The notes under the pieces: generated by a model | Told to the model about the DNA's origin: nothing | The model's database searches: none | Seen by the model: the letters and a program-made list of their open reading frames with translations, nothing else | Shown: piece by piece, positions 10,904 through 58,518 of the stretch | Position numbering within the stretch: the first letter of the stretch is position 1 | How the letters are laid out: each line of letters starts with the position of its first letter | From: Okamejei kenojei | Lineage: Eukaryota | Direction of reading: 5' to 3' | Length of the DNA: 64,000 nt | Assembly: GCA_035221665.1 (NCBI GenBank) | Contig: CM069147.1 | Span: 25,420,001 to 25,484,000 of the forward strand | Program-made: the position numbers and the translations under genes

Positions 10904-11026
10904 CTATTTAAAAATCCTGATTCCTGCATATTCTGTTTCGTTGTTCTTCACCGTTCTTGGATGTTTCAGAGAAGTGGTGAGATCCAGAGTTGTATAGGTC
11001 AGTTTATTTTCTGACACTTCTTGGAC
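10904..11026 (-). CDS. Gene A exon 7, terminal cytoplasmic exon (LTYTTL ITIM, TEYAGI ITSM, stop)
   Basis: Acceptor atttttcgatag; encodes VQEVSENKLTYTTLDL...NETEYAGIRIFK-TAG. Confidence 0.87.
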   Translation of the reverse strand, partial: VQEVSENKLTYTTLDLTTSLKHPRTVKNNETEYAGIRIFK

Positions 11027-14000
11027 CTATCGAAAAATAATCAGAGATCATGAGCTGCTGATTCCCCTATATGGGCGACGTACAGGAATTTACGTTGCAG
11101 TACACATCCGCTTTTACCTTACCTGGCCATAGGTAGTTTGTTCTTCGTGACGTCTGTTTTTCGTAGTTTTCTTCAGTCCGCTGAAATTAATATCTGCGTA
11201 CGTCGGATACTGAGGGAACATTTATTTGAAAGGAAATAAACTCCGCATTTACAAAGAACTGCGAAGACGAGCAAACGCAAAACAAGCGCGTGGAAGCTGG
11301 GTATGCACGACCAGTCATTCCATTGCTATATATGGTTACTTCCCTATGATGAGATTACTAAAAAAAAAGCAAACCGAAACAACTCGTATCTAATTGGTTT
11401 GAGTTCCCTGAATAATTTGTGAACTATTAGCCAAATCGTGAAACCAATAGGCAGAAAACTGACCGGAAGTTTGTTGGATGATGACTTCGAGGACAATATA
11501 TAGTTGACGCGATTTCTGGGCTCAGGTATATTAGCAGATTTTCCGTAATATATCAGAAAGAGCTGCCGCGCAAAAAATATGACGTGTGAATTTTGAATTG
11601 GAACAGGATGGGCCTCGGTTATGATGCTTGACGGAGTGAATAATCCGCTCGACACAGACAGAGTAGACATAAACTGTTTAGGATAACTCGAAGGTTACGC
11701 AAATGCACGTCGCTGACGGTCATGGACTATATCATAAGAATACGGAAGGATAAGGAAAATTGCAAACGAGGCACATACGGAGTTCCACGAAAAGTGGATC
11801 CATCATGTTGTCCAATCAATGTGATTATAATTACGGACGTCCATTTGCAGAACATGATACAACAGGTTATATCCTGTTATTCCATCAAAACAATTACCTG
11901 TTTTTCGGAGTGGTGGGTTCTGGCCTCAATATTTTCTGGTGCTAGTAGAGAACATAATAAAACGACCAAATTTTATCATCAGCGTGTCACAACCTGCCTG
12001 CCAATAGTCAGTTAATAATCGAGTTGTGACCAGATTCGTTCGGCTGCAGAAATTGGCCATAGCGGTCATGCTATTCTTGTTATTTAAACACATCCTCTCC
12101 TCGTTAGTCCTAATGCTAAGGAAAAACACACGGAACAGTTGAAAACCTCTTGTTTGCTTCCGCTTTCCTGTGATAACCATATAACCATATAACCATATAA
12201 CAATTACAGCACGGAAACAGGCCCTCTCGGCCCTTCCAGTCCGTGCGACCATTTGTTTTCCCCTAGTCCCATCTACCTGCACTCAGACCATACCCCTCCA
12301 TTCCATTCACGTCCATATACCTATCCACTTTACTCTTAAATGTTAAAATCGATCCTGCCTCCACCACTTCTGCTGGAAGCTGATTCCACACAGCCACCAC
12401 CCTCTGAGTAAAGAAGTTCCCCCTCACGTTACCCCGAAACCTCTGTCCCTTAATTCTCATGTCATGCCCTCTTGTTTGAATCTTCCCTACCCTCAATGGG
12501 AAAAAACGTATCCACGTCAACTCTGTCTATCCCTTTCATCATTTTAAAGACCTCAATCTAGTCCCCCCTTAACCTTCTGCGCTCCAAAGAAGAAAGACCT
12601 AACTTGTTCAACCTTTCTCTGTAACATAGTTGCTGGAACCCTGGCAACATTCTAGTAAATCTCCTCTGTACTCTCTCTATTTTGTTGACATCCTTCTATA
12701 ACTAGGCGACCAAAATTGTACACCATACTCCAGAATTGGTCTTACCAATGCCTTGTACAATTTTAACATTACTTCCCTACTCCTATATTCAATGCTCTGA
12801 TTTATAAAGGCCAGCACACCAAAGGCTTTCTTTACCACCCTATCTACATGCGATTCCACCTTCAGGGAACTATGCACAGTTATTTCTAGATCCCTCTGTT
12901 CTACAGCATTCCTCAATTCCCTACCATTTACCATGTACGTCCTATTTTGATTTGTCCTGCCAAGATGCAGCACTTCACACTTATCAGCATTAAACTCCAT
13001 CTGCCATCTTTCAGCCCACTTTTCCAAATGGCCCAAATCTCTCTGTAGACTTTGAAAATCTACTTCATTATCCACAACACCACCTATCTTAGTATCATCT
13101 GCATACTTACTTATCCAATTTTCCACCCCGTCATCCAGATCATTGATGTACATGACAAACAACAGTGGACCCAACACAGATCCCTGAGGCACCCCACTGG
13201 TCACCGGCTTCCAACCTGACAAACAGCCATCCACCATTACTCTCTGACATCTCCCATTCAGCCACTGTTGAATCCATCTTGCTACTCCACCATTAACACC
13301 CAAAGATTGAACCTTCTTAACCAACCTTCTATGGGGAACCTTGTCAAAGGCCTTACTAAAATCCATATAGACAACATCCACTGCTTTACCCTCATCAATT
13401 TCCCTATTTAACCGCCCCTATTTAAACAACCCGACCTTTGCAGCATTTCACCTAGTGTTTAAAGGCGCCTTATTTTAGAACAAACAGCTTAAACCGGTTA
13501 AAATGTTGTTTCCCACAGAATGCTGCGGCCGGAGAAAAGGTGCTGTGGTTAAAATCGTTATCTCAGCACTCCTCGTTACTCCTTCAATTGAACATTGCTA
13601 TTTTCGGAAAAAACACGAAATGTTGTAGTAATTCAGCGGGTTAGGCAGCATCTACGGGGGACATCAATAGCCGAAATTCCGGGTCGGGACCCTTCTTCAC
13701 ATGTGACTCGACCCCAAAAGTCCCCTATCCATTGTCTCCCCAGATGCTGCCAAACCGCCGAGTTACTCCAGCACTGTGTCGCTAATTTCGTACAAAGATC
13801 AAGACGCTTCTTACCTTCAGTACTGTGTAATATGCACCGCCTGGCATAAAATACCAGCGCTGGAATAATTAACACGCATATAGCAAATCCACCCGCCAGA
13901 AAGTAGACGGGTTTAACGCTTGTTCCTAAGGGGAAAATAAAATGTCAATATTATAACTTTTCAGAGGTTATCTTCATTAAATAATCAGAACACACGAACC

Positions 14001-17000: not shown

Positions 17001-20000
17001 TTTAACAGGCTTTGGGTTCCTTGAGAAGGGCAATCACCACCTTGTGCTCAACAGCGACACGTCTAGTAGAGCTGTTGTTCCACAGCAACAGAGATACAGG
17101 TTCAATTCTAACTTGGGCGTTGGGCCCTGTCTATGTGGAGTTTGCACTCTCTCCCTGTAATCATGTGGGTTTCCTCATGGTGCTCCAGGTTTCTCCCACA
17201 TCTCAAAGACGTGTGGATTTGTGCGGCAGCAATCGAGACTGCAGGATAGGTTATAGGGGATTGGAGTAGAATTGGGCCATTCGGCCATCCGCCATTCCAT
17301 CGTGGCTGATCTTTCTCTCTCTCCTAACCCCACGGTCTTGCCTTCTGCCCATAACCTCTGGCAACTGTACTAATCAAGAATCTATATCTCTGCCTAAAAA
17401 ATATCAACTGACGGCCTCCAAAGCCTTCTTTTAATTATTTAATTCTGAGGCTATGACCTCTAGTCCTAGACTCTCCCGCTAATGGAAACATCCTCTCCTC
17501 GTGCACTCAATCCAAGCCTTTCGCTATTCTGTATGTTTCAATGAGGTCCCGCCTCATTCTTCTAAACTTCAGCGATTACAGGCCTACTGCCGACAAACGC
17601 TCATCATAATTTAACCTACTGATTCCTGGGATAATTCTTGTAAACATCTTCCATGCTACTACCCTTTAATTTCAAGGAATCGTGCTCTGGATTTTAAGCG
17701 ACCATCGGATCGCCTGACTGCTGTTCTCCCTCTACTTTCTTTATCGCAAAAGCATTATTTAACCACAAACCATCTTCACTCTCCAGTATCCGCGAACACC
17801 TATTTCCCTTCTCACCGTACCTTCACATTCAGCGATAGATATTATAATGTTTGCCCTTTCAAAACTTCCATTAACACCATCCAGGGACCTGCGTACTCCC
17901 GCCAGAGTTCACCTTTTCAGATTTCAATTACAACAGTATATTTGGTGAGGTCTATTTTAGTTGGGAAACACCAAATGCAAACGAGAGCTGCGGCAACACA
18001 GTGTCGCAGCTGTAGAGCTGCTGTATTACAGCGCGAGAGACACAGCTTTGATCCTAACAATGAATGCTATCCGTGTGGAATGTGTACGTTCTCAATGTGA
18101 CTGCGTTTGTGTTCTTCGGGTGATACGGTCTCCTCCCACATCCCACAAAGTATGGATGTGCAGGCGTGTAGGCTAATTGGCTTCTGTAAGTTGTCGCCAG
18201 TGTGCAGGGAGTGAATGAAAAAATGTTCTAACAGAGAACTATATACCGGTGATCGATGATCAGTGTGGACTTGGTGTGCTGAAGGCTCCGTTTCCACGCG
18301 GTATCTCTAAAACTAAAACAGTCAATATGAAGATGTTAACTCAATTTCCAATTGTACCTAGAATCGTAATCCATCTTACATTTTCAATTTATTTTCTTTA
18401 CTTCTTGTCCTACCTCAACGAAGTCACAAGAATGCGTTATGGAATCTCTTCCAACTGCATTTACTGAAACCTTAGACCTGAGCAATGAATTCACCAATTT
18501 CAGAAAATTGGATGAAAACTGGCAGTTTTTATGAATAAAAATAATGGGATAAATTCCAGATGCTGGCAGCACAAAATTAACAAAACATAGAAATGTCTGG
18601 GAGCACAGACCAGATCAGACAGTTCATAGGGACGCCCATCATCCGGAATTATCGCTACTCCGTATTATGTGTATGACCGTTCGCACATTTTCTTATTTTT
18701 CCTTTATTTTCATTTTTCTCTACTGTTTGAATACAGATCAGCAACGATGAAAAAATAAATTATCTGAGTTAATGACCGCGTATGTTATTAAATTACCCGT
18801 GGCCTCTGTCCTCAGGTTTATTGGTTTGGTCAACTTGTTTTCATCCCTTCATTACCATCCCTCTCCAACGTTACAGCAATAAGACTGCAAATTATTTTAC
18901 ATTTAAACGATGTCCTTATTATGCAGGGAAATAGCTTTATAGGTATTTGCTGAGACGAGTCGAGGGTGTTCTGTGTGCTGTCCTGGTCATCCTGCTATAC
19001 GTAGCATATCATTATGTTGGAAAAGGTGCAGAAAGGATTCACCAAGGTATTACCTGGAATTAATGGCTGGAGTTATCCGGTGATGCTGAGCAGGTAGTGA
19101 CCTCTTCCCATGAGGCATAGGAGGTTTACCTAATTCAAGTATATAAAATTATGATGGGCGCATAGAAAGTGAATGCTTACAGTCGTTTTCTCCATGGTTA
19201 TGGATTCTCAACAGGGAAGGTTAAGAGGGGCCCAAGGGGCAATTTTTTTCTGAGAAAGCTACAGTAGTGTATACAATTGTGATTTTCAAAGGAAATTTGG
19301 ATAGATATGTGGATAGGAGCAATTTGGAGGGGACATTGGCAAATGCGGAGAAATGGGTCTAGTCCAGAATGCCAACTTGCTTGACGCGGACAGGGCGGGC
19401 CGAAGGGCCTTGCTTCCATGCTGTAGAGCTCTATATGATCAGAGATAAACAGCGAGTTCCAGCGTCCGCTATTATACAAACATGCAAACACAACTGTCAT
19501 CTTTGCGCGACGTCTCTTACTAACCAGTATCTAATTTCGTAGACTGATCCTACCTTTCCATTTCAACAAAGGCATGCTCACCATCTCCATTCAAACACTT
19601 ACAAACTGTCTGGCGTAAATTTTGGGTGGGAATTCATGAAATGCCGTGACATAAAAAACAGTGATATATCTCAGGACGTTATTGAAGGGATAAACCTCAT
19701 ACCGATTCCAGGAAATCTGTGAGTTTCAATGGTCGGAAACAGGAGGGTGACGTGAACCACGTGGCAACTATAAACAGATCGGCTATCTACTGCATGCAGG
19801 AAGCTGGAAGCAAGATATAATCCCTCGTCGTTCCGTATTTTAGTGGTATTTATTCCAGAAGTGATTTCGTGGTCATCTTTATACCAGGTAAGTTCACAGT
19901 CCTCCGGGAAAAACGGAGCAGTTGTACAGTTTAGGGCCAGGGAAGGAGTGTTCATCTGTTTAATCTTCAAAGGCGTCGGTGACACTGCAAACAATTTAAG

Positions 20001-23000: not shown

Positions 23001-25772
23001 CCTCAAAAACTCAGCCAACAGCAGGATCCCACAAAACCTTGCCACACTGTAATTACACTCCTGCCATCGAGAAGAAGGTATACGCGTTTGAAAACCATAA
23101 TCTTCATGATCAGAACGAGCTTTTTCACAACAACCATCAGGCTATTAGATACTACAAACACCAACTAAACCGAATACAACCCGTCTTTATTGTACTCGGA
23201 ACTTTGGAACATTTGTTTTTGTTTTGCACTAATATAGTTTTCTATTGAACTTATTTGGTTTTGTTTGTTGAGTACTGTGCCACAGACCCGTTATGCTGCT
23301 GCGACTAAGAACTTCATTGTTCTGTTTCTGTACATTGGTAATTAATCACCATTAACTGTTTGGGATAGATTTCAACACTCAGATGTCTGCAGCAAAAATA
23401 TGTAACTCACGTGAATCATAATAGATGAAAATGTTGAAGCAAACATTCAATCACTCACCTAGAGGGATACTCGGGTCCATTTGAACCTCAACACCCTCAA
23501 CTCACTCTATTTCTAAAATAATCGATCTCGCTATTTGTCTCTTCCAGTGCGTGGATATCCTCACTCAACCCCATCATTTTGCACCTGTCATATACTTACT
23601 TAATAAAAACATAGAAGCATAGAAAATAGGTGCAGGAGTAGACCATTCGGCCCTTCGAGCCGCCATTCAATATGATCATGGCTGATCATCCAACTCAGTA
23701 TCCTGTACCTGCCTTCTCTCCATACCCCCTGATCCCTTTAGCCACAAGGGCCACATCTAACTCCCTCTTAAATTATGTGGCAGATAATTCCACAGACTCA
23801 CCACTCTGCGTGAAAAATGTTTTCATTTTTGTTTTAGATATTTTTAAATAGGCAAAATAGGCAGGGAATGGAAGGATATGTCTCGCAAAGAGCGGATATT
23901 AATTTACCTTTGCACCATATTCGGCACTGGTATTGTGGGCCGAAGGGTCTATTCCTGTTATATGATTCGTTGTTGAATTCTATTTTGAGCTATTCTATTT
24001 TCTATTATAAGTTCGAAATTGATGGGATGCTTTAGGTATTTGTCGAGTTCGCAATACATGTCACGGTACTTAAACTGGCCAAGGTATAGTAGCGTGTCTA
24101 TGTGTATTCAGTAGTTGTTGATGTGGGATTGAAATAGTGCGCTGTGCGGAGGGAAGAGCGTACTCAGTTGGGTGAAGTTTTCTGGCATATTTCCACCCAG
24201 AAATCGAGTATGACGCTGACGTATAACTATCATTCAGACTGAAGCTTCTGTTCTCCCACTCGACGCTCTGCTGAGTTCCAATGAAACTCAACGTAAAATG
24301 AGGGATAACGTTTTGATTAATATTCACAATTTGCAATTTAATCATTTGAATTCTGGTACTACTTTTATCTCCTTTGTTTACATATTTTGTGACTTGTTGC
24401 ATTATTCTCAGATTTCCCCCCGTTTATAATTTAATGTTTTTGTTTGTCTTCCATCCATACTAATGCGCCACCACGCACACTACCTACTCTTCCTTGCTAT
24501 ACCTCTGAAATTATTTAACAATTTTCACCATGAATTTTTGTTACTTCCGCTATAACGTTCTAGGCGGAAACTAATTTCTGTATTCGCAGATATGTTGTGA
24601 CTCGTATTTTATCATTCATTTTCTTTGAAACTATGAATTCCTAAAATCATGGTAGAATAATCGTACACAAGATTGCGGTTAGAATATATCACGCTCACTA
24701 TTCACCAAATGTTTCTTCTAACAACATACATTTTGTTAACATTTACTCGTTGGACTAGAAATAACTACATAAATGGTCAAGTATGATGATTCTTCAACAA
24801 ATAGATCAATTCGTGATTCCCCCAAGAATGCTCCATCATCTGGATATCACCGGTCTAGACTGGAGCGCAATGTTTTTTTTGACTAAACGACTGCAGCTAC
24901 AATACCCGCTAACATATGACGGTTTCCATTTCATTGACTACCATCTGCAATCTTAATCTATACTCCTTTCGCAGGGTGCAGTTGAGGGGCCGCCAAGAAA
25001 ATTAACCCTACACATAAAAATGATAACTAAATGATATGAAATTAAAGAATAATGATTGTCCAAAGATCTCATGGTCCAACAATCACGAGAACTCAATTAC
25101 TTAAATCGTTAGAGCAAAACATCTAGTACATACTGAGAAAGGTCCGTGTATTGCTACTTGATAACTCTGTAGCCCACCATATTTATTTTTGTTTTGTGAT
25201 TCGAAACATCAAGTAAGACTCACCGTGAACAGTAATCCTCGTGCCATTGCTTTTGGAACTCTTTCCTTTCTCGCCTCTCACACTGCAATAATAGAACCCG
25301 GAGTCACGGAAGCTCACGTCCAACAGATGTAATTCGGCAGATCCCTTCCGAACATTGTTCTTTGTCATCCTCCTGTTTGCGAGGGGATCCAAAGTCTCTT
25401 CTTGACCGTCTCTCTTCCAGTATACATCCACCAGTGCATTCTGACCGAAGATTGGGAAAGTACAGTATAGGGATACATTTTCACCTTTCACTTTCGTTAC
25501 CTTATCGGGAATCTGACGCACCCTGAACGAGGAGGCCCGGACAGTAACTGTCAGAATTAAAAACAAACGTTAAACATGTGAAATGACAATGAACGGATTG
25601 ATAAAAATCCAAATAGCTGAAAAAGCTCGACCGAAAAGTAAGAGTTGTACATCTTATACTTTTCGTGGATTGACCTTTTCCCTATTATTTTCATTTAATA
25701 GAGAGAAATATATTAACCTGTGTAACTCATGCACAGGATCGAGAGACACAGCAGCACGGCAAACATAAACAT
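10904..25772 (-). CDS. Gene A: type I membrane IgSF receptor (leader-VJ-C1-TM-ITIM/ITSM tail), SIRP-alpha-like predicted inhibitory receptor; 7 exons, 341 aa
   Basis: Exons 25772-25718, 25547-25224, 19984-19703, 13925-13815, 11941-11898, 11209-11123 and 11026-10904 join at GT-AG sites with intron phases 1,1,1,1,0,0. They give one open frame of 1026 nt ending in TAG. Confidence 0.88.
11123..11209 (-). CDS. Gene A exon 6, cytoplasmic (YPTYADINF...QTTYGQ)
   Basis: Acceptor gttccctcag, donor CAG|gtaagg; 87 nt, phase 0-0; two tyrosine motifs. Confidence 0.85.
11898..11941 (-). CDS. Gene A exon 5, cytoplasmic linker (APENIEARTHHSEKQ)
   Basis: Acceptor ttctctactag, donor CAG|gtaatt; phase 1->0, as needed to link the TM exon to exon 6. 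Confidence 0.72.
12173..13406 (-). mobile_element. CR1 LINE, 5'-truncated, in gene A intron 4
   Basis: RT ORF 12677-13381 (DFSKAFDKV, GVPQGSVLGP, YADD); (ataaccat)n tail at 12173-12200. Confidence 0.92.
13815..13925 (-). CDS. Gene A exon 4, uncharged transmembrane segment (VYFLAGGFAICVLIIPALVFYA-RR)
   Basis: Acceptor ttattttccccttag, donor G|gtaaga; hydrophobic run followed by basic stop-transfer residues; 111 nt, phase 1-1. Confidence 0.85.
14020..14400 (-). mobile_element. CR1 RT fragment
   Basis: FDEVPH...HGIKG...YVNDLD remnants. Confidence 0.7.
15680..16470 (+). mobile_element. Penelope-like element 3' part (GIY-YIG endonuclease plus pLTR with hammerhead-like core)
   Basis: ORF 15690-16130: CTSFNLIYCI...IYIGETKRRL.DRF.EH...PV..HFN. 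ctgaagaagggtctcgacccgaaa at 16380. Confidence 0.88.
17990..18320 (+). mobile_element. tRNA-derived HE1-like V-SINE (other copies near 17040, 21840, 26350-26650, 31360-31550, 54560-54850, 58585-58720)
   Basis: tRNA-like head (gtgtcgcagctgtagagctgctg...gatcct), conserved central ctcccacatcccacaaag...gtaggctaattggc, CR1-derived tail. Confidence 0.7.
19703..19984 (-). CDS. Gene A exon 3, Ig C1-set domain
   Basis: LNC..APFFP....TWYK...GLY...S.L...YSCHVVH; acceptor tgtttgcag, donor G|gtatga; 282 nt, phase 1-1. Confidence 0.92.
22240..23340 (+). mobile_element. Degenerate Rex1/Babar-type LINE (RT and 3' end) in gene A intron 2
   Basis: PQGCVL, KFADYTTV, IVDFRR and SVLTGCITAWF remnants. Confidence 0.75.
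25224..25547 (-). CDS. Gene A exon 2, Ig V-set domain with J-like G strand
   Basis: LYC...VYW...DSGFYYC...SNGTRITVH; acceptor ttctgacag, donor G|gtgagt; 324 nt, phase 1-1. Confidence 0.93.
25718..25772 (-). CDS. Gene A exon 1, signal peptide MFMFAVLLCLSILCMSYT
   Basis: ATG, hydrophobic leader, phase-1 donor G|gttaat, 170-nt intron to the V exon. Confidence 0.8.
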
Positions 25773-27576: not shown

Positions 27577-28032
27577 CATAGAAATAGGTGCAGGGGGGGG
27601 CATTCGGCCCTTCGAGCCAGCACCGCGATTCATTGAGATCATGGCTGATCATCCCCAATCAATAACACGTGCCTGCCTTCTCTCCATATCCCTTGATTCC
27701 ACTAGCCCCTAGAGTATCTAACTCTCTCTTAAATCCATCCAGTGACTTGGCCTCCAATGCCCTCTGTGGCAGGGAATTCCACAAATTCACAACTCTCTTG
27801 GTGAAAACGTTTTTTTCTCACCTCACTCTTAAATGGCTTCCCCTTTATTCTAAGACTGTGGCCCCTGGTTCTGGACTCGCCCAACATTGGGAACATTTTT
27901 TCTGCATCCAGCTTGTCCAGTCCTTTTATAATTTTATATGTTTTTATAAGATCCCCCTCATTCTTCTAAACTCCAGTGAATACAAGTCTAGTCTTTTCAA
28001 TCTTTCCTCATATGACAGTCCCGCCATCCCAA
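27577..28032 (-). mobile_element. CR1 LINE 3' end
   Basis: Antisense of GMAGLSYEERL...EFRRMRG, plus 3' UTR. Confidence 0.85.
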
Positions 28033-28076
28033 GAATGCACATCTCATGGTTCATCCGAGGCTTCTGGTTAAAAAAA

Positions 28077-40279: not shown

Positions 40280-42372
40280 ACATCAAATGTGTTTATACTG
40301 CAGAATATTCAAGGCTTTAAAATTGAATGTATTCCCAACCTGTGTCCACCCACCCAAAACGGACACTCATCTTCTCACGACCAGAGAATTTGATGATCCA
40401 AGCTGAAATAGCAAAATTATGCCTGAAGGGGATAATTGAGAAAACAATTTATCAAACTCATCAATTCGTGTCTAATGTGTTTCCTAAACCAAAGAAGGAT
40501 GGTGGGTGTCGGATTATTTTGGACCTAACAGGATTTAATCCATTTGTGCAGTATCAGCATTTAAAAATGGAAACATTTGCTACTGTCAAGCTATTGCTTT
40601 CCAGGGGGCGTTATATGGCATGTATAGATCTCCAGGATGCGTATTATGCAGTGCCTGTTCATAAAGACTATCGCAGATATTTGAAATTTAGCTGGATGGG
40701 ACAATTGTGGCAATTCGACCTCTACCTAATGGATTGACCTCAGCCCCTCGCCTATTTACAAAGCTGCTAAAACCAGTACTTGGGTTATTATGGTCACAAG
40801 GTCATATTGTCATGGCCTATTTGGATGACATTTTAATCATTGGAAACACCTTGGACGCAGCCGAGTTATCAGTTTCAGATGTTCAACTCATGATGCAGAG
40901 GCTAGGTTTCATTGTCCATCCAGTTAAATCAAAATTGGTGCAGGTTAACCTAATTGACTATCTGGGATTCACAGTTAATTCCAATCACATATCTGAGACT
41001 CTGCCCCAGGGCAAGAGAGTAGATTTAATTGAAGGCTGTATCAAGCTCTTTAGGGAGCAATCACCCTCAATTAAACAGGTCGCCAGCGTAATTGGTAAAT
41101 TGTTAGCAGCCTTTCCAGCAGCCCAATATGGACCTTTGCACTAGCAACATTTACTGAGGGCAAAGGTATAGGCACTGAGAATACATGCAAGTCATTACAA
41201 TCGGCCCATGCACTTACCATCTGAAGCCATTGCAGAAGTACAGTGGTGGATTAGAAACATATTAAATTGTTATGGCACAATTTTGGCTGAAGCACCTTCA
41301 CTTATTTTACAGACTGATGTTAGTGCCCTCGGTTGGGGTGCTACTGATACCAGGTCTAGATGTGGAGGCAGATGGGGTATGCATGAGGCACCGATTTTCC
41401 AATCACATGGAATAAATTATTTAGAACTTTTGGGAGCATTTTATGGGCTCAAAGCTTATTGTACCACTAAGCATCACTTACATGTTCAACTGCAGATTGA
41501 CAACACCACGGCAGTGGCGTATGTCAATCACATGGGTGGAACCAAGTCGAAATCTTGTGATGGATTGGCTAACATTATTTGGCACTGGTGCATTAAAAAG
41601 AATATTTGGATTTCAGCTGTCTACTTGCCAGGCAGACTTAATATAGTGGCGGACACCAGGTCACGTAAATTCAACGACAACACTGAGTGGACGTTGAATC
41701 AGGATGTATTTGATGAAATTGTCCTTCGGTATGGGATGCCAGATATCGATTTGTTTGCATACAGACATATTCACCAGGTACCAAAGTATGTTTCATGGGA
41801 ACCAGACCCAGGGGCAGTGGTGGTTAATGTGCTCTCACTGTACTGGAGCGGAATGTTTTTATATGCCTTTCTCCCCTTCTGCCTCATCAGTCGGTGCCTG
41901 ACCAAGATCAAGCAGGACTCTGCTACAGGGGTTTTGGTACTACCAACTGGCCTACACAGCCATGGTTCCCGCTCATCTCTGGCATAATCACGCACTGTAT
42001 TATGGTGGTTCCAAAATATATTGGTGCACCCTGTGACTGGGGATCCACACCCATTGAATGACCGAGTAAATTTGTTGATTTGCAGATTTTAAGAAGGCCG
42101 TACCTGGGTCTGGGACTCTCCAATCAGACTGTGGATATCATCACGTCATCCTGGAGCGATAGTACAAAAAGGCAGTACATCTCCCACATCAGGAAATTGA
42201 AGGAATTTTGCTTATATGGAAACATTACTTACCACACAGCCTCCATCCCAAATGTGCTAGAATTCCTATCCCAGTTACATTTCAATGAAGGGTTGAGTTA
42301 TAGTGTCATCAACAGTGCCAGGAGTGCCTGAGCCAGGGGTCAGGATTCCAGCTGCTAGGGTCACATCCGTTA

Positions 42373-44525
42373 TTATTACCCATATCACCCATCTGAGGTA
42401 TGCTTTTACGAAATTGTATTCCCTTCGTTTTTACTGCCAGCAGCGCTAACAGGGGAATATTTTCTTATATTCCCCTTTCTAGCGAACGCCTATGGACTTT
42501 ACCTGTTCAAAACTCTTTAGATTCTGGAGTAGTTCCTGAGGATTGGCGGGTAGCAAATGTAACCCCTCTTTTTAAGAAGGGAGGGAGAGAGAAAACGGGG
42601 AATTACAGACCAGTTAGTCTAACATCGGTAGTGGGGAAACTGCTAGAGTCAGTTATTAAAGATGGATAGCAGCACATTTGGAAAGTGGTGAAATCATTGG
42701 ACAAAGTCAGCATGGATTTACAAAAGGTAAATCATGTCTGACGAATCTTGTGGAATTTTTCGAGGATGTAACTAGTAGCGTGGATAAGGGAGAACAGTGG
42801 ATGTGGTATATCTGGACTTCCAGAAGGCTTTCGACAAGGTCCCACATAAGAGATTAGTATACAAACTTAAAGCATACGGTATTAGGGGTTCAGTATTGAT
42901 GTGGATAGAGAACTGGCTGGCAAACAGGAAGCAAAGAGTAGGAGTAAACGGGTCCTTTTCACAATGGCAGGCAGTAACTAGTGGGGTACCGCAGGGCTCA
43001 GTGCTGGGACCCCAGCTATTTACAATATATATTAATGATCTGGATGAGGGAATTGAAGGCAATATCTCCAAGTTTGCGGATGACACTAAGCTGGGGGGCA
43101 GTGTTCGCTGTGAGGAGGATGCTGGGAGACTGCAAGGTGACTTGGATAGGCTGGGTGAGTGGGCAAATGTTTGGCAGATGCAGTATAATGTGGATAAATG
43201 TGAGGTTATCCACTTTGGTGGCAAAAACAGGAAAGCAGACTATTATTTAAATGGTGGCCGATTAGGAAAAGGGGAGATGCAGCGAGACCTGGGTGTCATG
43301 GTACACCAGTCATTGAAGTAGGCATGCAGGTGCAACAGGCAGTGAAAAAAGCGAATGGTATGTTAGCTTTCATAGCAAAAGGATTTGAGTACAGGAGCAG
43401 GGAGGTTCTACTTCAGTTGTACAGGGTCTTGGTGAGACCACACCTGGAGTATTGCGTGCAGTTTTGGTCTCCAAATCTGAGGAAGGACATTATTGCCATA
43501 GAGGGAGTGCAGAGAAGGTTCACCAGACTGATTCCTGGGATGTCAGGACTGTCTTATGAAGAAAGACTGGATAGACTCGGTTTATACTCTCTGGAATTTA
43601 GGAGATTAAGAGGGGATCTTATAGAAACTTACAAAATTCTTAAGGGGTTGGACAGGCTAAATGCAGGAAGATTGTTCCCGATGTTGGGGAACTCCAGGAC
43701 AAGGGGGCACAGCTTAAGGATAAGGGGAAATCCTTTAAGACCGAGATGAGAAAGACTTTCTTCACACAGAGAGTGGTGAGTCTCTGGAACTCTCTGCCAC
43801 AGAGGGTAGTTGAGGCCAGTTCATTGGCTATATTTAAGAGTGAGTTGGATGTGGCCCTTGTGGCTAAGGGGATCAGAGGGTATGGAGAGAAGGCAGGTAC
43901 GGGATACTGAGTTGGATGATCAGCCATGATCATATTGAATGGCGGTGCAGGCTCGAAGGGCTGAATGGCCTACTCCTGCACCTAATTTCTATGTTTCTAT
44001 GTTTCTATGTAAACAGCGGGAATATAGTCTTATATTCCTGGTCTCACATCCGGGAACTTGGCAAGGTGATGGCAACGTGACGGCAACATGACGCTGCGTG
44101 CGAAATTTAAAATTTATTCTCAAAACAAACGAAATGGCAGCCGGTGCGAGAAGAGGTTCGCGATTTAAAAGTTTGACCTTCACATTGTCACATAAATGAA
44201 TTACATAAATTACATAAATGAAACATAAATGTTACATTGTTTTAGTACCCTTATTTACAATGTTGCAACGGTTTTAGTACCTTATTTACAATGTTGCAAT
44301 GCCTATTGCAAAATGTATAGATACATTCATATCATATGAGATGTTCAGATTTTCCTCTAGATGTCTGATAATGGGTAATAATAACAATATTGACTGTCCT
44401 CTTTCGGGAGATACGACATATATTGCCCTCACTAGATCCATATTGCCCTCGTCTTCGACTCGGGCAATATGAATCTACTTCAGGCAATATATGTCGTATC
44501 TGCCTCAAGGCCAGTCAATATTCTA
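42373..44525. mobile_element. Non-coding insertion with an asymmetric inverted repeat and terminal hairpin (contains a CR1); class uncertain
   Basis: Splits the YR frame GSHPL|ISRFMKG with a TTA duplication; ~135-bp hairpin at 44386-44522. Confidence 0.65.
42507..44010 (+). mobile_element. Relatively young CR1 (HER1-like) LINE, 5'-truncated
   Basis: RT ORFs 42797-43321 and 43324-43749; (ttctatgt)n tail. Confidence 0.93.
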
Positions 44526-45716
44526 TTAATATCCAGATTCATGAAGGGTGTGTTTAATTCTAATCCTCCTAGGTCTAGGTACTCTGAAATTTGGAATGTG
44601 AGCATGGTACTCACGGTGCTCCGTCAACGGGGAACAGCCACATCATTGTCCTTACCAAGGATCACCCTCAAGTTCGTTATGCTCATGGCACTTACATCAG
44701 CGCAAAGGGTTCAGACTCTCCACAAACTGCATCTGGATAGGATGGGTCATCATAGAATGGCATTACCTTTCACATCTATGACTTACTCAAACAGAGCAGA
44801 CCAGGGGTGTCCGGATACAGGCTTGTATTGTCAGCTTATCCCACAGATTCCCGGCTGTGTGTAGTGGCGCATTTGAAGCGTTATATTGACATCACAAAGA
44901 GCCTCAGAGGCTCTGAGGTAGCACTGTTTGTAAGCCACAAAAAGCCACATAGGCAAGTGTCATCTCAGAAGATCTCACGGTGGATGAAGCAAGTCCTGGG
45001 GTTAAAACAGATTTTTTTTAAATCTCACTCCACCAGGGCGGCATCAACATCAGCGGCGAGGGCAATGGACATCCCTCTAGACCACATCCTCGCGGCCGCA
45101 GGATGGTCAAATGAATCGACTTTTCCGAGGTTCTACAACAAGCCCCCTGTTGAATCCGGGGTGTTCGCCCACTCTGTGTTAAATTTTGCTTCATAGCTTC
45201 TCCCTGGGAGGGAGTAGTCGCTATTGTATTATTTTTGTTATTTGCGAATTAAAGCATTAACATGTTAATCAATATCATGAATCAATGTTGTTATGAATTC
45301 ACTCCTCCTGAGTCAACTGCTTGCAGTGTGATATGCCTGGATTGGGATCGGGGTGAAATCACAGACCTTTAAAGTCTTCACGGAATCACTCACGTGACTC
45401 CGAAGTAAAATAGTAAGATTAAACGAGAACTTACCAGTTTGAAGTTTGAACTTTATTTTATGAGGAGTTACGATGAGCGATTGCCTGCCCACCGCTCTCA
45501 ACCCTCATATCACGAAGCTCATCTTGTAGTTCTAAAGTGATAATCTTACTATTATTGAATACTTCAATTGTTGTTCTTCTGTAATTTCACACCTGCTTTG
45601 AAGATTGACGCGCATGGCGACTGGCGGGGTTCTTCTTCACGTAATCGCTCATCGTAACTCCTCATAAAATAAAGATCAAACTTCAAACTGGTAAGTTCTC
45701 GTTTAATCTTACTATT

Positions 45717-45800: not shown

Positions 45801-48325
45801 CGCGCTACAGTCACGAAAGGAGTGACGTGCTTCATCGTCCGACAATCCAACCTTCAAAAACGGTTCACGCCCTGTGATCACTTGCTGCAGAATGTTGACC
45901 GTAAGCATACATTGATGCAAACAGGATGAAAATTGTTTTGTTTTCATCCCATGCCCTGGCGGGAGAAAGGTTTCGGGCATTATTCTTAAATCCAGTGGCT
46001 TACTGAAAATAGTCAATATGAGTCTACAGGATGCACGAGGGTATTATTGTACCATTAACCGCCGGGGCACTTTAGTTGGCAACGGTACCGGGACGACTTT
46101 AGTTGTGATGGGTAGATATATTTAAATGTGTTAGGAATGCGATTTCGCGACTGTGATATTACCCCGCAAGTAAGGTCGTTGTTCAGATTTGAATCATTTA
46201 TGCAGCCATATGAATATCATAAGTATTTCAAATTGTAAATCATACCATAGATGGTCTGCATGCTGAAAGGTATAAAGAAGATGTATCGGAAGATGTATCG
46301 GAAGTTTATTTCCAAAGTACAGCATAACACATTTCATTGTAAAATTGTAGTGGCCGTTGTGACTACGGAAAAGACATGTGCAACTATCGTAGTGGGTGAC
46401 CGCCTATGATATACCAGTTCCCCTGTCATTTCCCCCTCTATGAAATGACACCACAGTACAACTAACTTTTCCACTATGTCCATAACCCAGATGATATCTG
46501 TTATTCACAGGATATCTACTTCGTTTAGTTAAGCCATATGCCTTCTAAAGAGGATTTGAGAGCCCCGTTGTGACATTGGGGATGAATGAATGCGGAGATC
46601 CGATCGCGTTATCAATTTTTTCTTGTTCATTCTAGTCGGCGGCGTGAATGTAATTGGAAAAAAACACACATTCATATTGAGGAATGACTCATTTCCATCA
46701 TATTTCAATTGAAACATTTGCATGTGGTTAAAGGGAAGAATTTGTCCTACTGTTTAATGTGTTTCATCAATCAATTAACTTGATCAATCAACTGACCTGA
46801 GGGGAAATTTCAGATTCGGAAGCTCACAGCAATCCAAGAAAAGGAAACGCGGTATTTAATCATTTAATATGTCTGCAATATGTCGAGGCAATGCGTTTCC
46901 GTGGAATATTTAATTGAAAAATACGGCAGCCAAACGTGTCACTATCCCGAGTATTTTGCAGTCACTAGCATGCATTTCACAAAACGGATTGGCAGAAGCA
47001 GAAGTACTTGCTGATTTCTATTAAATTGCTTACACCCATTACAATCAACGGTATCTTCTGTCAACCTGACATCAGTTAACACAAAAACGAATGGTGATTA
47101 AGCGGCCCTTTCCGAACAATTCAGTTGTCATCTTCTGTAGTAGTATTTATTTTGAAATGTAAGAATAAATTCCAAGAATTTATGAATCAATCAAAAATAA
47201 AACCCAAGATGATCCCGCCATAAAAACACGCATTTTTGTGCGATTCGTATTGTGGCAATTTGAGAATTAGAATTACACCGCCGTCCTCGGCTTCTGAGTT
47301 ACAAATAACTTTTATAGCTCTGAAATGTTAGGATCATATTCTTTCAACAACCGGAACATTCCGTATTCAACATTCGCAGCGTCAGTGGAGAGATAATGAA
47401 AATAAAAAAGCTTCAGGTCTAATTCTCAATAGCAAAATGACAAAGAGGGAAAGGAGCTTAGTTTCAAGTTGCAGAAAATTTGGGACGGCTAGAACCGCAA
47501 AGGGGACATTTCGAATAGGTCTGGAGCGCATAAATGCTGGAAAACATGCGACAGAAATGCAGGGAATATTCAGTGAATTTGACAGTCTGATTTGAGAATT
47601 AACAATATAGAGCAGACCTCTTCTGCTGCGGACAAGGAAGTCGAAGACTACAGTGCAGTCTTGGATCATGGGATAAAAGGTATTATTTCATGTCAGCAGA
47701 ATGGCGGATTTTGCCGCAGAATGATAGGGTCGGTAGGATGTCCTTGCAGAACAAATGTGACTAAACTAAACTAACAGTTTTGCTTTCTCCAGTGCTCCAG
47801 TTGTTGTCTCAGTTCTGACTATAGGCGCTGTCTGCTCTGCTCAATCGAATATACTAATTTCAACAAAAGAGGGCAGCTATTTAAAATCTAGTCGCATCGG
47901 AATTGCTTTTCACGGAAGGAGCTGAATCTCCTCTCCCTTATAAAGGTAGATTATTGAAAACATTTAATCGAATTACCGATATTTGATTTGAAAGATCAGG
48001 GGATGGAATGCTATGGGGAAATGGCATAGAAGGAGAATTGGAGGCAAGGGTGGATTAAGTACTTACTGAATGGCGAGGCAGCCTTGAGTGTTCAAATGGC
48101 ATATTCCCTGTTCCTAACGTTTAAGTTGTGCGGAAGATAGATACAAATAACTGGCGTAAGTCAGCGGGACAAGCAGCATCTCTGGAGAGAAGGGAAGGGT
48201 GACACTTCAAGGCGAGACCTTCAGACAGTTTTACTTCTTCAAACTAGCCATACCTTGGGGAGATTTCGCAGTGGAGCGGGCAAAATGTGTCAAAAAAGTA
48301 CTACAGATTATGGTTTAAATCGAAG

Positions 48326-48495: not shown

Positions 48496-49175
48496 ATATT
48501 CAGTTGTATTTCTTGTTCTTTTGACTCCTACCGTTTTTCCCGAATCGAAAGCGATCTTTTATTTTAAATCCCGTGACAACGGAGAAATGGGGATGGCATT
48601 AAATTGGTCCCATCATCCAGGCGCTTTGATGGCGCTTTGCAAGTCATAAGGCAGTAAAATGTAGCAAAGGCTGGGCAAGGGGTGGAGGAGGCGGTGGCTG
48701 AACTGTTTCGAGAAAGGCTCCATGTACTTGCTTGATACTCCGTGATGACTTAGCTTGCTTAGCATCATGGCGTGTTGAATGGAAAGTATTGGCGCAATGA
48801 AAGCAGGGCGTATCTGCGACACGTCACTGTATTTTCACAAACGTCGACCTTGGATAGCATATTCGCGACGATCAGTACGAGCACATTGCTCAATAGATTG
48901 CATGGGGAAATGCGCAATGGCAGCAATTTCTAGCTGCATTGAATTTCTGTAGTTGTTCAGCAAATGCTTTGTGAAGTTTTCGGGAATGTGTGAGCAGCCA
49001 CTAACTTGACCTTTGATCCGCGTCAATACGCAGAGAAGCATCTCATGCATGGGATGATCATGAGCAGACTCACTTTCCGGCACACCCACTGAACCCAAGC
49101 ATACTCGCGGTGTTCCTCTCTCACTATTTATTCGACGCTTGTTTCAGTCGACTGTTCTGTGCAGTTTTGCCGTGC

Positions 49176-49227
49176 ATGATGACACGTGTCTTTCTGCAAT
49201 TGATTGTTCTTCACGTCAGCTATGCCG
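49176..49227 (+). CDS. Gene B exon 1, signal peptide MMTRVFLQLIVLHVSYA
   Basis: ATG, hydrophobic core, phase-1 donor G|gtatat; 160-nt intron, similar to gene A. Confidence 0.75.
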
Positions 49228-52200
49228 GTATATTTCACTCTTACTATAGACATTCCGACCGAAACTTAATTATCAATTTATAAGTTTGCTGACCCTTTAT
49301 TTATTTTTTCCTCGTTACGCGCAATTTTCAATTAATTTGGTCATTACCTCGGTTTAACCCTAAATTTGATTTTTCTTTTCCCGACAGCTGGTGCCAATGG
49401 TCCGTTGGACGTAACACAAGTTCCAGAAGCTGTTTTGATGCGGGGTGACTCGGCAGTGCTTTACTGCATTTATCCAATCTTCTCAGACAACAGGCCGTTC
49501 AAAGTGCATTGGTGGAGAGATGGGGATAATAGATTCCTGGATGAAAGTGCAGATAAAAGAATCCAGTTTTATTTCCTGAGACGGGGAAGCGCCGTCTTAC
49601 GGCTCGGGGACGTGACAGCGAAGGACGCCGGGCTCTATTTTTGTAGCTTGACACGTACCAAAGTTGTTAACGGGTCTGGTACAAAGCTGGTAGTTTACGG
49701 TGAGTTTCGGGGAGAGGGGTAAGCCAGATCGGTTAACTTCACCAACTCAAAGCGATAAGCTCAATCACGTTGAAGAAAATGCACGTTATTCATCATCTGT
49801 GTCATTTGATATAATATGATTTGTGTGATGGGTTAGATAGTGTTTTTGACGCAATTACCAAAAAAATCCGAATAGACTGATTGAGAGACTAAATGACGCC
49901 TTCCACATCTTCTGCTTGACAGAATTATAAAACCTTTCGCGTATATTTTAGAATTGCTTCAACGCAGAGGGAATGGTGTTACTGAAACCAACGACACGCG
50001 GTACAGGTAGTTGAGATTGAAAATATGTAGGGTTCCGAATGTGGTACTGATCAAGGAGATTATTTTTTTTAATTGATTTATTTGCAGCTGCCATCTTTTT
50101 TATCTAAAGTGTAAGGAATTGCAAGTGTAAGGAATTACAGAATCATAGAATCATACAACACAACAACTGGCCCGTTCTGCCCACGTTGTCTCTGCCGATG
50201 GTGCTACTTGTATATGTTGATGCTGTTTGCCTGCATTAGGCCCATATCCTTCTATAACTCTTCTGCGCAATTACTGGTTTAACGCAATTTAAATGTTATT
50301 ATTGTACTGCACCCTCTCCGGTGGTAGATGTTCCAGGTATGCAAACCTTCCTCTTCTCCTTTACATGTTTCCCCTTTCACCTAAAAACCCTGCCACATAG
50401 TTCTTAATTCCACTATTCTGGGGAAAAGACCCCGTCTATGCTATGAGTGGCCCCGATATTTAAAACAAAAACGTTTATTAATTTACTCCTCTGCTTCCTT
50501 TCTACCATTGAGAATAAACGCAGTTTACCAAATGTCTCGTTATAAAAAGGCCCTCTATTTCAGTCAACATTCTGGTGAACCTCTTTTGCACTTGCTCAAT
50601 AGGTACGATGTTTAACCGTAGTATAAGTTTGGTCACACTTCTAATTGTCCCGGATTACTTGAAATTATATAGGTGCCGTGAAGCGAGTCAATCATTGAGG
50701 AACTCAAAATTAAAGATCTATATTGTTACATTTAGCCTGCAGAAGGGTCACGACCCGAAATGTCACCTATCCCTTTTATCCAGAGATGCCTTCTGCGCGC
50801 TGAGTTACTCCAGCTTTTAGCCAGGTTTAACCCAGCATCTACAGTTCCTTCCTACACGTTGTTGTATTAACGTGTATTCTCCGCTCACGTTCCAAGCGAT
50901 GGAAATGGCATTAAGATCATATAGATATTGAAAACGGTTTGTTTATAAATGGTGCAAATGTACTTGTAGTTTGCATCTCAACCCTACGTTTTGGGCGGCT
51001 TACGCAGACGCTGATCACTGTTTGAGCTGTAGTAAATGGAAAGGGTTGGTGACTTTTCCATGAATGAATGTCATTGATATCGTGTCAGAGGACTTAACAT
51101 ACCATCCAGATTCTTAAGGGAATGTGTTGGTCTGGGATAATTGTTCTCGAAGTAATGCAACTACTTTCTTCTGTGCTTAACGGAATTCTAAATAGCAAGC
51201 TGTTCCCTCTGGTCCAACTTTACAATATGTTTTCACACAAGGACAAACATTCTTCTGACCTTCTAACTCAAACATATTTTTGACCTCAAGTTACTGCTGA
51301 ATAAATCTTCTGCTCGATTTAGTTATTTCAACAACGATAAAGAATATATTTGTAAAATGTTGATACTCGAGCTATTATTAAGGGTTACATTGTGTACAGT
51401 TATATCACCAAATTATAATAAAAATCGTGAAGACGTTTAGAAAATTAAAGTTAATGCTTTGGCTCTTAATGTCTGTGCATGGAACAGAACGCATAATTTA
51501 CTTGCGCTGCGAGTAGAAACAGAAAGTATATGATATTTATGATGTAAGGTAACCGTTGTATAATAGACACAAACTGTAAAATCAGCGCATACAATAAAGA
51601 GGTTTAAAAGGAATTAAATTAGACGTTAGTTTATGCCACAAGGAACAATATTAGCAGTTTTAAATCGTTTTAAGTGCTTTAAATCGCTACAACTAGCCTG
51701 AAAAGGTTCAATGAAGACCATTTTCGAGGCCACAATGACATTTGATTCGTCACGAAAAGCACCGGACCGGTAACATTTAAAAATCGTTTTATTTTCCAGA
51801 CCCTCCAACTCCTCTGAGCTTGACCACCGTGCTGCCAGAGAACGCACCAGTTACTCTAATTCTCGTTTGTAAAACAGCCACGTTCTTTCCCCTTGATCTG
51901 AATATTACTTGGTACAAAAATGGGTCCGATATGAAACATGAAATGGAGCCAAACAAAACACAGACAACATCAGGACTCTACGAGGCTTGGAGTTACCTGA
52001 CGGAGACCGAACATGTGCAGAGCGGGACAGTTTATACCTGCCAGGTATCTCATATTTCTCTTCCAAATCCAACCAATATCAGCTACACTGTCTACAGCCG
52101 AGGTAAGAACAACGATACGTTTTCGGTATAATTTGGCCACTTAGAACCCTGATTACCTCATAAACAGGCGCAGATAATAAAGAACAATATTGTTCGTTTA

Positions 52201-58200: not shown

Positions 58201-58518
58201 TGATGCTTTTATTATATGTCATATGCACACAACTGGGATTGGACAGAAATGGAAAACAGCAACTGCGCTCATGGGTAATGTTCCTATCTGTTTATTTCGC
58301 GTCGAAAAGTCAAATCGATATATTTTTTTAACGACAGAATTACGCTGTTGAACTGATTACCTGTCCTATTATATAATGTTGTACATACGTTAAAACTGAC
58401 CGCTATTTTTTTTAATTATTTACAGTTTTTGTTAATCCACTTCACAACACGATTTTAGGTTGCATAAGAGCAGGATTGATACTGATCATATTCGTTATTT
58501 TCATTGTGATATATAAAG
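49176..58518 (+). CDS. Gene B: type I membrane IgSF receptor (leader-VJ-C1-TM with Arg), NKp30/SIRP-beta-like predicted activating receptor; last exon unresolved
   Basis: Exons 49176-49227, 49388-49699, 51800-52102 and 58426-58518 join in frame through phase-1 GT-AG introns. V and C1 are clearly paralogous to gene A. Confidence 0.85.
49388..49699 (+). CDS. Gene B exon 2, Ig V-set domain with J-like GSGTKLVV
   Basis: LYC...VHW...DAGLYFC...NGSGTKLVVY; acceptor cttttcccgacag, donor G|gtgagt; 312 nt. Confidence 0.93.
51800..52102 (+). CDS. Gene B exon 3, Ig C1-set domain
   Basis: LVCKTATFFPLDLNITWYK...GLYEAWSYL...YTCQVSHISL; acceptor ttattttccag, donor G|gtaaga; 303 nt. Confidence 0.93.
53420..53906 (-). 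mobile_element. CR1 LINE 3' end in gene B intron 3
   Basis: ORF 53513-53980 encodes the CR1 C-terminus; a short acagc-type repeat is inserted near 53830-53856. Confidence 0.85.
58426..58518 (+). CDS. Gene B exon 4, transmembrane segment with arginine (ILGCIRAGLILIIFVIFIVIYK)
   Basis: Strong acceptor ttttaattatttacag, donor G|gtaaga; 93 nt, phase 1-1; not in the ORF track. Confidence 0.82.

What the first reader, a model, noticed from the sequence alone, without database searches (positions are those of the whole stretch)
10904..58518. Head-to-head pair of non-rearranging VJ-C1 immune receptors with opposite signalling modules
Seen: two divergently oriented paralogous genes share exon order and phases (leader, V, C1, TM), ~160-170-nt first introns, and motifs (LYCxxPIF, WxRDG, RxGSAxLxLxDV, PTPL, FFPxD..TWYK, GLY). 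Gene A has a neutral TM plus four Tyr motifs; gene B has a TM arginine. Established: this split defines paired receptor families such as SIRP-alpha/beta, LILR, CD300 and teleost NITRs. Inference: a cartilaginous-fish paired receptor system on an antigen-receptor-like V-C1 ectodomain, combining a SIRP-alpha-type inhibitor with an NKp30-type activator. I cannot assign it to a named family. An alternative is that the two chains form a TCR-like heterodimer.
Basis: partly seen in the sequence, partly recalled or inferred. Interest (0 to 1): 0.92.

Follow-up and report, generated by a model that had tools for sequence, protein, structure and literature searches.

The report
Skate V-C1 immune receptor gene pair
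Two back-to-back genes in a skate genome belong to a large, still uncharacterised family of immune receptors found only in sharks, rays and chimaeras; one is a typical "brake" receptor, while the other probably switched from brake to "accelerator", and the two are not a matched pair.

Summary
Pfam confirms V-set plus C1-set in both.

A and B share just 38-40% identity. They belong to different, well-supported subfamilies of a family found only in cartilaginous fishes. NCBI names its members inconsistently (SIRP-alpha-like, tapasin-related, NCR3LG1-like, uncharacterised).

Gene B's full-length relatives in four shark and ray species all have a neutral TM and a long ITIM tail. Its TM is that same type with a lineage-specific Arg. 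A profile search that detects gene A's tail exons finds no tail exon in the 5.5 kb downstream of B. So B is probably a recent inhibitory-to-activating convert, but its 3' end is unresolved.

True activating partners in this family have 84-86% identical ectodomains and a different conserved TM (Arg ... IVDH). None is in the window.

No RNA evidence was obtainable. The scan has noted similar clusters elsewhere in this genome.

The parts
25718..25772 (-). Gene A leader exon (MFMFAVLLCLSILCMSYT + 1 nt, phase 1)
   Evidence: Read from sequence; donor GT at 25717-25716
25224..25547 (-). Gene A VJ-type V exon. The J-like end is degenerate (SNGTRITV), two residues shorter than the GNGTxLIV of its relatives.
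   Evidence: V-set, E 6.5e-13; 54-59% identity to ray and shark relatives
19703..19984 (-). Gene A C1-set exon, 282 nt, phase 1 at both ends
   Evidence: (C1-set, E 2.3e-12)
13815..13925 (-). Gene A transmembrane exon with no charged residue in the core (GGFAICVLIIPALVFY), followed by RRCILHSTE
11898..11941 (-). Gene A cytoplasmic exon 1, newly proposed here. It is 44 nt, converts phase 1 to phase 0, and is needed to keep the tyrosine tail in frame.
   Evidence: resembles the Mobula segment AAENDENLSRYLENQ
11123..11209 (-). Gene A cytoplasmic exon 2 (YPTYADINF...TTYGQ)
   Evidence: (E 2e-6 to Heptranchias P0162)
10904..11026 (-). Gene A cytoplasmic exon 3 (LTYTTL ITIM, TEYAGI ITSM, stop TAG 10906-10904)
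   Evidence: (63% identity to Hemitrygon P0157)
49176..49227 (+). Gene B leader exon (MMTRVFLQLIVLHVSYA + 1 nt, phase 1)
49388..49699 (+). Gene B VJ-type V exon with a canonical GSGTKLVV J-like motif
   Evidence: V-set, E 4.6e-9; 88.5% identity to Leucoraja erinacea P0175
51800..52102 (+). Gene B C1-set exon. If its donor is read through, a stop follows at 52129-52131, which would give a possible soluble form.
   Evidence: (C1-set, E 7.2e-14)
58426..58518 (+). Gene B transmembrane exon (ILGCIRAGLILIIFVIFIVIYK). Arg sits in the outer third of the TM. The exon ends in a phase-1 donor. If unspliced, the reading frame ends GKTPKLFDF with a stop at 58545-58547.

Best explanation
The window holds two intact-looking members of a multigene family of germline-joined V(J)-C1-TM surface receptors found only in cartilaginous fishes. 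The species is a skate close to Leucoraja erinacea.

The V domain is antigen-receptor/NKp30-like. The C1 domain and the tyrosine tail are SIRP-alpha-like. The family runs on the usual paired-receptor logic:
- Inhibitory members have a neutral TM and a long tail with ITIM/ITSM tyrosines. By inference these recruit SHP-1/SHP-2 after Src-kinase phosphorylation.
- Activating members have a short tail and a TM arginine. By inference this couples to an ITAM adaptor of the FcR-gamma/CD3-zeta type.

Gene A is a typical inhibitory member of one old subfamily.

Gene B belongs to a different old subfamily whose full-length members elsewhere are all inhibitory. In this skate lineage its TM has gained an Arg (GCLGAGL to GCIRAGL), and no conserved tail exon is detectable downstream. 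It is therefore most likely a recent conversion from inhibitory to activating, or possibly a decoy.

A and B are neighbours in a tandem cluster shaped by duplication and transposon insertion. They are not a ligand-sharing matched pair.

Shown: exon anatomy, domain types, family membership, subfamily placement, and the absence of recognisable tail exons in 5.5 kb. Inferred: expression, splicing, adaptor and phosphatase coupling, and ligand.
For: - Exon anatomy.
- Domains.
- Relatives, all from cartilaginous fishes: 54-59% (A-V) and 52-89% (B-V) identity.
- V tree: B groups with Leucoraja, Mobula, Heterodontus and Heptranchias at 100/99 support; A falls with the ray and shark A-type sequences.
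- B-subfamily full-length proteins P0171, P0172, P0173 and P0174 have neutral TMs and ITIM tails.
- Of 49 family proteins, 29 are the inhibitory type and 8 the Arg-TM short-tail type. No inhibitory-type TM carries an Arg.
- A profile of B-subfamily tails finds gene A's two tail exons (17.5 and 16.9 bits, the two best hits in the whole window). It finds nothing above 3 bits on the plus strand after 58518.
- V profile against solved structures: TCR V-alpha 48.9 bits, VNAR 44, human NKp30 41-42.
- Fold of a family member: nearest solved chains are TCR-beta and Ig light chains.
Against: - There is no transcript evidence. No RNA run held the locus, and the three runs laid covered only repeats.
- B's TM exon keeps a near-consensus phase-1 splice donor, which argues that it still splices to something downstream.
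- Tail exons are short and fast-evolving, and could lie beyond the window end.
- The skate orthologue model P0175 lacks a TM exon, so conservation of the Arg among skates is untested.
- The nurse-shark NCR3 family paper (Kinlein et al. 2021) could not be read, so overlap with a published family is not excluded.
Confidence: 0.65

Rival explanations
1. A and B are a matched inhibitory/activating pair that see the same ligand and deliver opposite signals, in the manner of SIRP-alpha/beta.
For: The genes are adjacent and divergent, with the same exon plan and shared motifs. A has an ITIM tail and B a TM Arg.
Against: - Ectodomain identity is only 38-40%.
- The two genes lie in separate subfamilies that predate the shark-ray split.
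- Real pairs in this family are 84-86% identical and use a different activating TM.
- B's subfamily is ancestrally inhibitory.
Confidence: 0.12
2. Gene B is still an inhibitory receptor, or is decaying. Its ITIM exons lie beyond the window or are too diverged to detect, and the TM Arg is a neutral or deleterious substitution.
For: - The TM exon keeps a strong phase-1 donor.
- All full-length B-subfamily relatives are inhibitory.
- A high-copy repeat begins about 67 bp after the exon, so the locus may have been rearranged.
Against: - The positive-control profile search finds no tail exon in 5.5 kb, whereas A's three tail exons lie within 2.9 kb of its TM exon.
- All four B exons found are open with canonical splice sites.
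Confidence: 0.3
3. A and B chains form a TCR-like heterodimer.
For: - Each chain is V-C1, and the nearest folds are TCR-beta and Ig light chains.
- A Cys sits in or at the outer edge of the TM in both genes and in most relatives.
- A-type and B-type genes have adjacent accession numbers in Mobula birostris.
Against: - Both subfamilies carry their own signalling tails.
- The A subfamily also has activating twins of its own.
- Gene A's J-like G-x-G bulge is degenerate.
- No binding test was run.
Confidence: 0.07
4. The genes are members of the already published shark NCR3 (NKp30) family, so nothing is new.
For: - Human NKp30 is the best non-rearranging single-V match to the family V profile, at 41-42 bits.
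- NCBI names a V-only isoform from Pristis 'NCR3-like'.
- Eight divergent nurse-shark NCR3 subtypes are published; this is recalled from the paper's abstract and from its citation in PMC12227049.
Against: - NKp30 does not score above TCR V-alpha or VNAR.
- PMC10751288 treats NKp30 as a VJ gene and UrIg as the novel VJ-C1 gene.
- Full-length family members are never named NCR3 by NCBI.
- The scan's notes list separate V-only NKp30-like genes elsewhere in this genome.
Confidence: 0.2

Closest known systems
SIRP family (SIRP-alpha / SIRP-beta)
   Same: - Non-rearranging V with a J-like end, followed by a C1-set domain.
- The inhibitory form has four cytoplasmic tyrosines, including YADL/I and TEYA(S/G)I-type motifs.
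- The family also has short-tailed forms with a basic TM residue.
- NCBI names many relatives 'SHPS-1-like' or 'SIRP-beta-1-like'.
   Different: - One C1 domain here, not two.
- The SIRP-alpha V domain is not among the 60 best matches to the family V profile.
- The activating forms use Arg with a conserved IVDH end. SIRP-beta uses a Lys that pairs with DAP12 (from my own knowledge).
- No bony-vertebrate orthologue was found.
NKp30 / NCR3
   Same: - VJ-type non-rearranging V domain.
- Best non-rearranging V match among solved structures.
- TM Arg in the outer part of the membrane, as in gene B.
   Different: - Human NKp30 has no C1 domain and no ITIM tail.
- B's Arg is not conserved in its own subfamily.
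- MHC linkage and a B7H6-type ligand were not tested.
UrIg / UrIg2 (shark non-rearranging VJ-C1 genes, PMC12227049)
   Same: A germline-joined VJ exon with a split leader, followed by C1-type domains, restricted to cartilaginous fishes. UrIg2 is the top solved-structure hit for A's C1, although that score is summed over its several domains.
   Different: - UrIg has three C1 domains and is secreted, and UrIg2 has nine or more. Here there is a single C1.
- This family also has ITIM or Arg-TM signalling modules and is greatly expanded in copy number.
Xenopus XMIV and teleost NITR paired V-type receptors
   Same: Multigene families of VJ-type receptors with both ITIM and charged-TM members (from my own knowledge, not tested here).
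   Different: Those families lack a C1-set domain. No sequence relationship was tested here.

Membership tests
V(J)-C1-TM receptor family of cartilaginous fishes (unnamed; known only from NCBI gene models) | Leader, VJ-type V and C1-set domains, with the conserved motifs (YC.FP.F, WW+.G, GSA.L.L, PPTPL, FFP...LTWYKNG, GLY, YTC.VSH) | tested here: met
   A-V is 54-59% and B-V 52-89% identical to named gene models.
V(J)-C1-TM receptor family of cartilaginous fishes (unnamed; known only from NCBI gene models) | Either a neutral TM with an ITIM/ITSM tail, or an Arg-TM with a short tail | tested here: met
   Gene A is the first type. Gene B has an Arg-TM, but on the inhibitory-type TM backbone, and its tail is unresolved.
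SIRP | V-C1-C1 ectodomain | tested here: not met
   Each gene has only one C1 exon. A tblastn of the exons against the whole window finds no further C1 exon.
SIRP | Sequence orthology to SIRP V and C1 domains | tested here: inconclusive
   SIRP-alpha and SIRP-gamma appear among the C1 hits (50 and 47 bits) but below Ig heavy chains. The SIRP V domain is absent from the top 60 for the V profile. No reference SIRP sequences were available for a tree.
SIRP | Four-tyrosine inhibitory tail that binds SHP-1/2; CD47 as ligand | not testable with these tools
   The motif layout is present in gene A. Binding needs experiments.
NKp30 / NCR3 | Single VJ-type V ectodomain with no C domain | tested here: not met
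   A C1-set exon is present in both genes.
NKp30 / NCR3 | V domain closer to NKp30 than to other V domains | tested here: inconclusive
   NKp30 scores 41-42 bits, against 48.9 for TCR V-alpha, 44 for VNAR and 40 for CD79b.
NKp30 / NCR3 | TM arginine conserved, coupling to CD3-zeta/FcR-gamma | tested here: inconclusive
   An Arg is present in B but absent from the four full-length B-subfamily relatives. Coupling is not testable here.
NKp30 / NCR3 | Linkage to the MHC | not tested
Rearranging antigen receptors (TCR/Ig) | Separate V and J segments flanked by recombination signals | tested here: not met
   The V and J-like parts are one exon that ends in a splice donor.
Tapasin / TAPBPR | Large N-terminal tapasin domain ahead of the Ig domains | tested here: not met
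   The leader splices directly to the V exon. Pfam reports only Ig-type domains.
UrIg / UrIg2 | VJ followed by three or more C1 domains | tested here: not met
   One C1 exon only.

The most novel reading that the evidence does not exclude
This family, found only in cartilaginous fishes, combines an NKp30-like VJ domain with a SIRP-alpha-like C1 domain and four-tyrosine tail. It could be a surviving form of the ancestral non-rearranging VJ-C1 receptor from which NKp30-type and SIRP-type receptors later diverged. Skate gene B would then capture an inhibitory receptor in the act of becoming activating, through one TM substitution (Gly/Ala to Arg) plus loss of its tail.
Probability: 0.12. Interest if true: 0.8.

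Novelty: new member of a known kind. Interest (0 to 1): 0.52.

Why it matters
Paired inhibitory/activating receptor families are among the fastest-evolving immune genes, and they are poorly charted in the oldest jawed vertebrates.

A family spanning all cartilaginous fishes, with a germline-joined VJ domain and a C1 domain, bears on how antigen-receptor-like ectodomains were used before or alongside RAG-mediated rearrangement.

It also offers a clean system for studying how inhibitory receptors turn into activating ones. One conserved activating TM type runs from chimaera to rays, and gene B is a possible independent switch in skates.

In practical terms, the inconsistent automatic names hide one coherent family. 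The names in use are SIRP-alpha-like, tapasin-related, NCR3LG1-like, CD276 homolog and Ig lambda-like.

Tried and rejected
- **RNA support.** The look-up of sequencing runs listed no RNA holder. Laying the three runs with the same species label on 58300-64000 covered only high-copy repeats and gave zero depth on B's TM exon. No junction could be checked.
- **Literature.** Kinlein et al. 2021, Flajnik et al. 2012 and 2023, and Ohta and Flajnik 2015 are not held. Searches for shark SIRP-like or paired V-C1 receptors found nothing relevant.
- **Single-exon searches of solved structures** gave only generic Ig-superfamily hits.
- **ESM Atlas** returned only generic 'antigen receptor' V-set clusters.
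- **Fold search** of a modelled family member gave TCR-beta and Ig light chains with poor superposition of the two domains. It does not discriminate between families.
- **Classical activating TM exon (Arg...IVDH)** in the window: none found.
- **Extra TM exon at 52820:** rejected. It is a reverse-transcriptase motif (PQGSVLG).
- **Pair of ITIM-like motifs at 59938 and 60010:** rejected as chance. There is no homology, and about this many motif pairs are expected by my own estimate.
- **Joined spliced model.** All searches used single exons by reference or natural database proteins.
Full report
**What is in the sequence.** Gene A lies on the minus strand and gene B on the plus strand, head to head. 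Exon coordinates for both genes are listed under Parts; they were read.
- Each gene has a leader exon, a VJ-type V exon, a C1 exon and a TM exon. The first introns are 170 nt (A) and 160 nt (B).
- All Ig and TM exons are phase 1 at both ends, with canonical AG/GT boundaries.
- Pfam gives V-set and C1-set for the respective exons of both genes.
- A and B share 38% identity in V and 40% in C1.
- A's TM core is uncharged. B's TM reads ILGCIRAGLILIIF..., with the Arg in the outer third of the membrane span.

**Corrections to the gene models.**
- A's tail exons are 11209-11123 (PTYADI, TTYGQV) and 11026-10904 (LTYTTL, TEYAGI, then the stop). Exon 11209 is phase 0 and the TM exon ends in phase 1, so direct splicing would hit a stop after seven codons.
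- A 44-nt exon at 11941-11898 restores the frame. It has a strong polypyrimidine tract with AG and a GTAATT donor. Its product, APENIEARTHHSEKQ, resembles the corresponding Mobula segment AAENDENLSRYLENQ.
- B's TM exon ends in a near-consensus phase-1 donor, so the gene as described is incomplete at its 3' end.
- If that donor is not used, the frame ends GKTPKLFDF with a stop at 58545-58547.
- The two start codons are 23.4 kb apart, with reverse-transcriptase fragments between them. Another such fragment sits in A's intron after the TM exon.

**What family it is.** An exhaustive HMMER search with A's V exon found full-length relatives of 220-450 residues. All those whose source was looked up come from cartilaginous fishes:
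- Rays, skates and sawfish: Mobula, Hemitrygon, Hypanus, Pristis, Leucoraja, Amblyraja.
- Sharks: Scyliorhinus, Cetorhinus, Carcharodon, Heterodontus, Heptranchias, Chiloscyllium, Hemiscyllium, Mustelus.
- Chimaera: Callorhinchus.

NCBI's automatic names for them are inconsistent. They include 'tyrosine-protein phosphatase non-receptor type substrate 1-like' (that is, SIRP-alpha-like), 'signal-regulatory protein beta-1-like', 'tapasin-related protein-like', 'NCR3 ligand 1-like', 'CD276 homolog', 'Ig lambda-like' and 'uncharacterized'.

One case is telling. A V-only isoform from Pristis is named 'NCR3-like', while its full-length isoform is named SIRP-alpha-like.

A profile of 20 members found no convincing bony-vertebrate relative. 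That search scores only candidates that share short words with the query.

**Resemblance to characterised families.**
- A profile of family V domains, searched against solved structures, ranks TCR V-alpha (48.9 bits), shark VNAR (44), human NKp30 (41-42) and CD79b (40) as the best whole-domain matches. The SIRP-alpha V domain is not in the top 60.
- The C1 exons hit Ig heavy-chain constant domains, MHC, beta-2-microglobulin, SIRP-alpha/gamma and UrIg2 without any clear preference.
- An AlphaFold model of the Heptranchias member P0162 has 217 of 360 residues at pLDDT 70 or above, mostly in the ectodomain. Its nearest solved chains are TCR-beta and Ig light chains.
- In short, the V domain is antigen-receptor/NKp30-like. 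The single C1 plus the four-tyrosine tail is SIRP-alpha-like. The architecture matches neither family.

**A and B are not a matched pair.**
- In a V-domain tree, B sits in a clade with 100/99 support together with Leucoraja erinacea P0175 (88.5% identity in V and 84% in C1), Mobula, Heterodontus and Heptranchias.
- That level of identity to L. erinacea indicates that the window comes from a closely related skate.
- A falls with the ray and shark A-type sequences.
- Both subfamilies therefore predate the split between sharks and rays.
- Genuine pairs in this family look different. Mobula hypostoma P0160 is 84% identical to the inhibitory P0005 over the aligned ectodomain. Heptranchias P0179 and P0180 are 84-86% identical to the inhibitory P0162.
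- Those activating twins carry a distinct TM, with Arg near its outer end, IV(D/N)(H/Y) at its inner end, and a tail of 6-19 residues.
- This TM type recurs from Callorhinchus to Mobula.
- No such exon exists in the window.

**Gene B's signalling module.**
- The four full-length B-subfamily proteins (Mobula, Hypanus, Heptranchias, Heterodontus) have neutral TMs (GCLGAGLIIFL or LGTGIILFL) and long tails with ITIM/ITSM motifs.
- B's TM is that same type, with Arg in place of Gly or Ala. None of the 29 inhibitory-type TMs examined carries an Arg there.
- A profile of B-subfamily tails was searched against all six reading frames of the whole window. Its two best hits were gene A's two tail exons (17.5 and 16.9 bits). 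Nothing above 3 bits lay on the plus strand after 58518. tblastn and a motif scan agree.
- A's three tail exons lie within 2.9 kb of its TM exon, whereas 5.5 kb were searched downstream of B's.
- A high-copy repeat starts about 67 bp after B's TM exon.
- My reading is that B lost its ancestral tail and gained a TM Arg, so it became an activating or decoy receptor. I put this at about 55%. About 30% goes to B still being inhibitory, or decaying, with tail exons that were missed.

**Mechanism (inferred, not shown).** For A, ligand binding through the VJ domain would lead to phosphorylation of the ITIM/ITSM tyrosines and recruitment of SHP-1/2, which damps activation. For B, the outer-leaflet Arg would pair with the TM Asp of an FcR-gamma/CD3-zeta-type adaptor. 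The ligands are unknown.

**Heterodimer alternative.** This is unlikely. Each subfamily has its own signalling tails, and the A subfamily also has activating twins. A's J-like G-x-G bulge is degenerate. A conserved Cys in or at the outer edge of the TM does leave room for disulfide-linked dimers.

**Limits.**
- There is no RNA evidence.
- The key shark NCR3 paper could not be read, so overlap with that published family cannot be excluded.
All searches used single exons by reference or natural database proteins.
- The scan has already noted similar VJ-C1 clusters elsewhere in this genome.

Noticed in passing
window 45940-46110 (+): A relic of the 3' half of a VJ exon (...[37 protein letters not shown]), 40% identical to B's V exon (E 5e-5). 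It lies about 3 kb upstream of gene B's leader in the same orientation, and the 5' half is missing. It is probably the remnant of another family member.
   Followed up: partly
window 63509-63996 versus 10142-10654: A direct duplication at 79% identity of sequence lying 250-760 bp 3' of gene A's stop. Read depth shows that 63266-63838 is high-copy repeat, so that prediction is weak.
   Followed up: partly
window 58586-58720, 61356-61546, 63266-63838: Very high-copy short repeats, with contig word depth in the thousands to tens of thousands in three runs. The first begins about 67 bp after gene B's TM exon and may mark a rearranged 3' end.
   Followed up: no
window 52103-52131 (+): If the donor of B's C1 exon is read through, the frame ends ...SRGKNNDTFSV with a stop, giving a possible soluble V-C1 form. 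The Leucoraja erinacea gene model P0175 uses the equivalent read-through and has no TM exon.
   Followed up: partly
window 12263-13381 (-), 27669-31216 (+), 34866-45196 (both strands): Retroelement debris. Pfam confirms reverse-transcriptase fragments at 12680-13381, 40707-41141 and 42797-43318. Two similar long ORF sets in opposite orientation (36329-38228 minus; 40327-41987 and 44469-45196 plus) look like copies of one retroelement, but they got no Pfam name apart from the 40707-41141 RT fragment.
   Followed up: partly
relatives outside the window (P0160, P0179, P0026, P0114, P0045, P0027, P0177): A conserved activating TM exon type, with Arg near the outer end and IV(D/E/N)(H/Y) at the inner end followed by a very short tail. 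It is shared from chimaera to rays, which suggests one ancient adaptor-coupling module in this family.
   Followed up: partly
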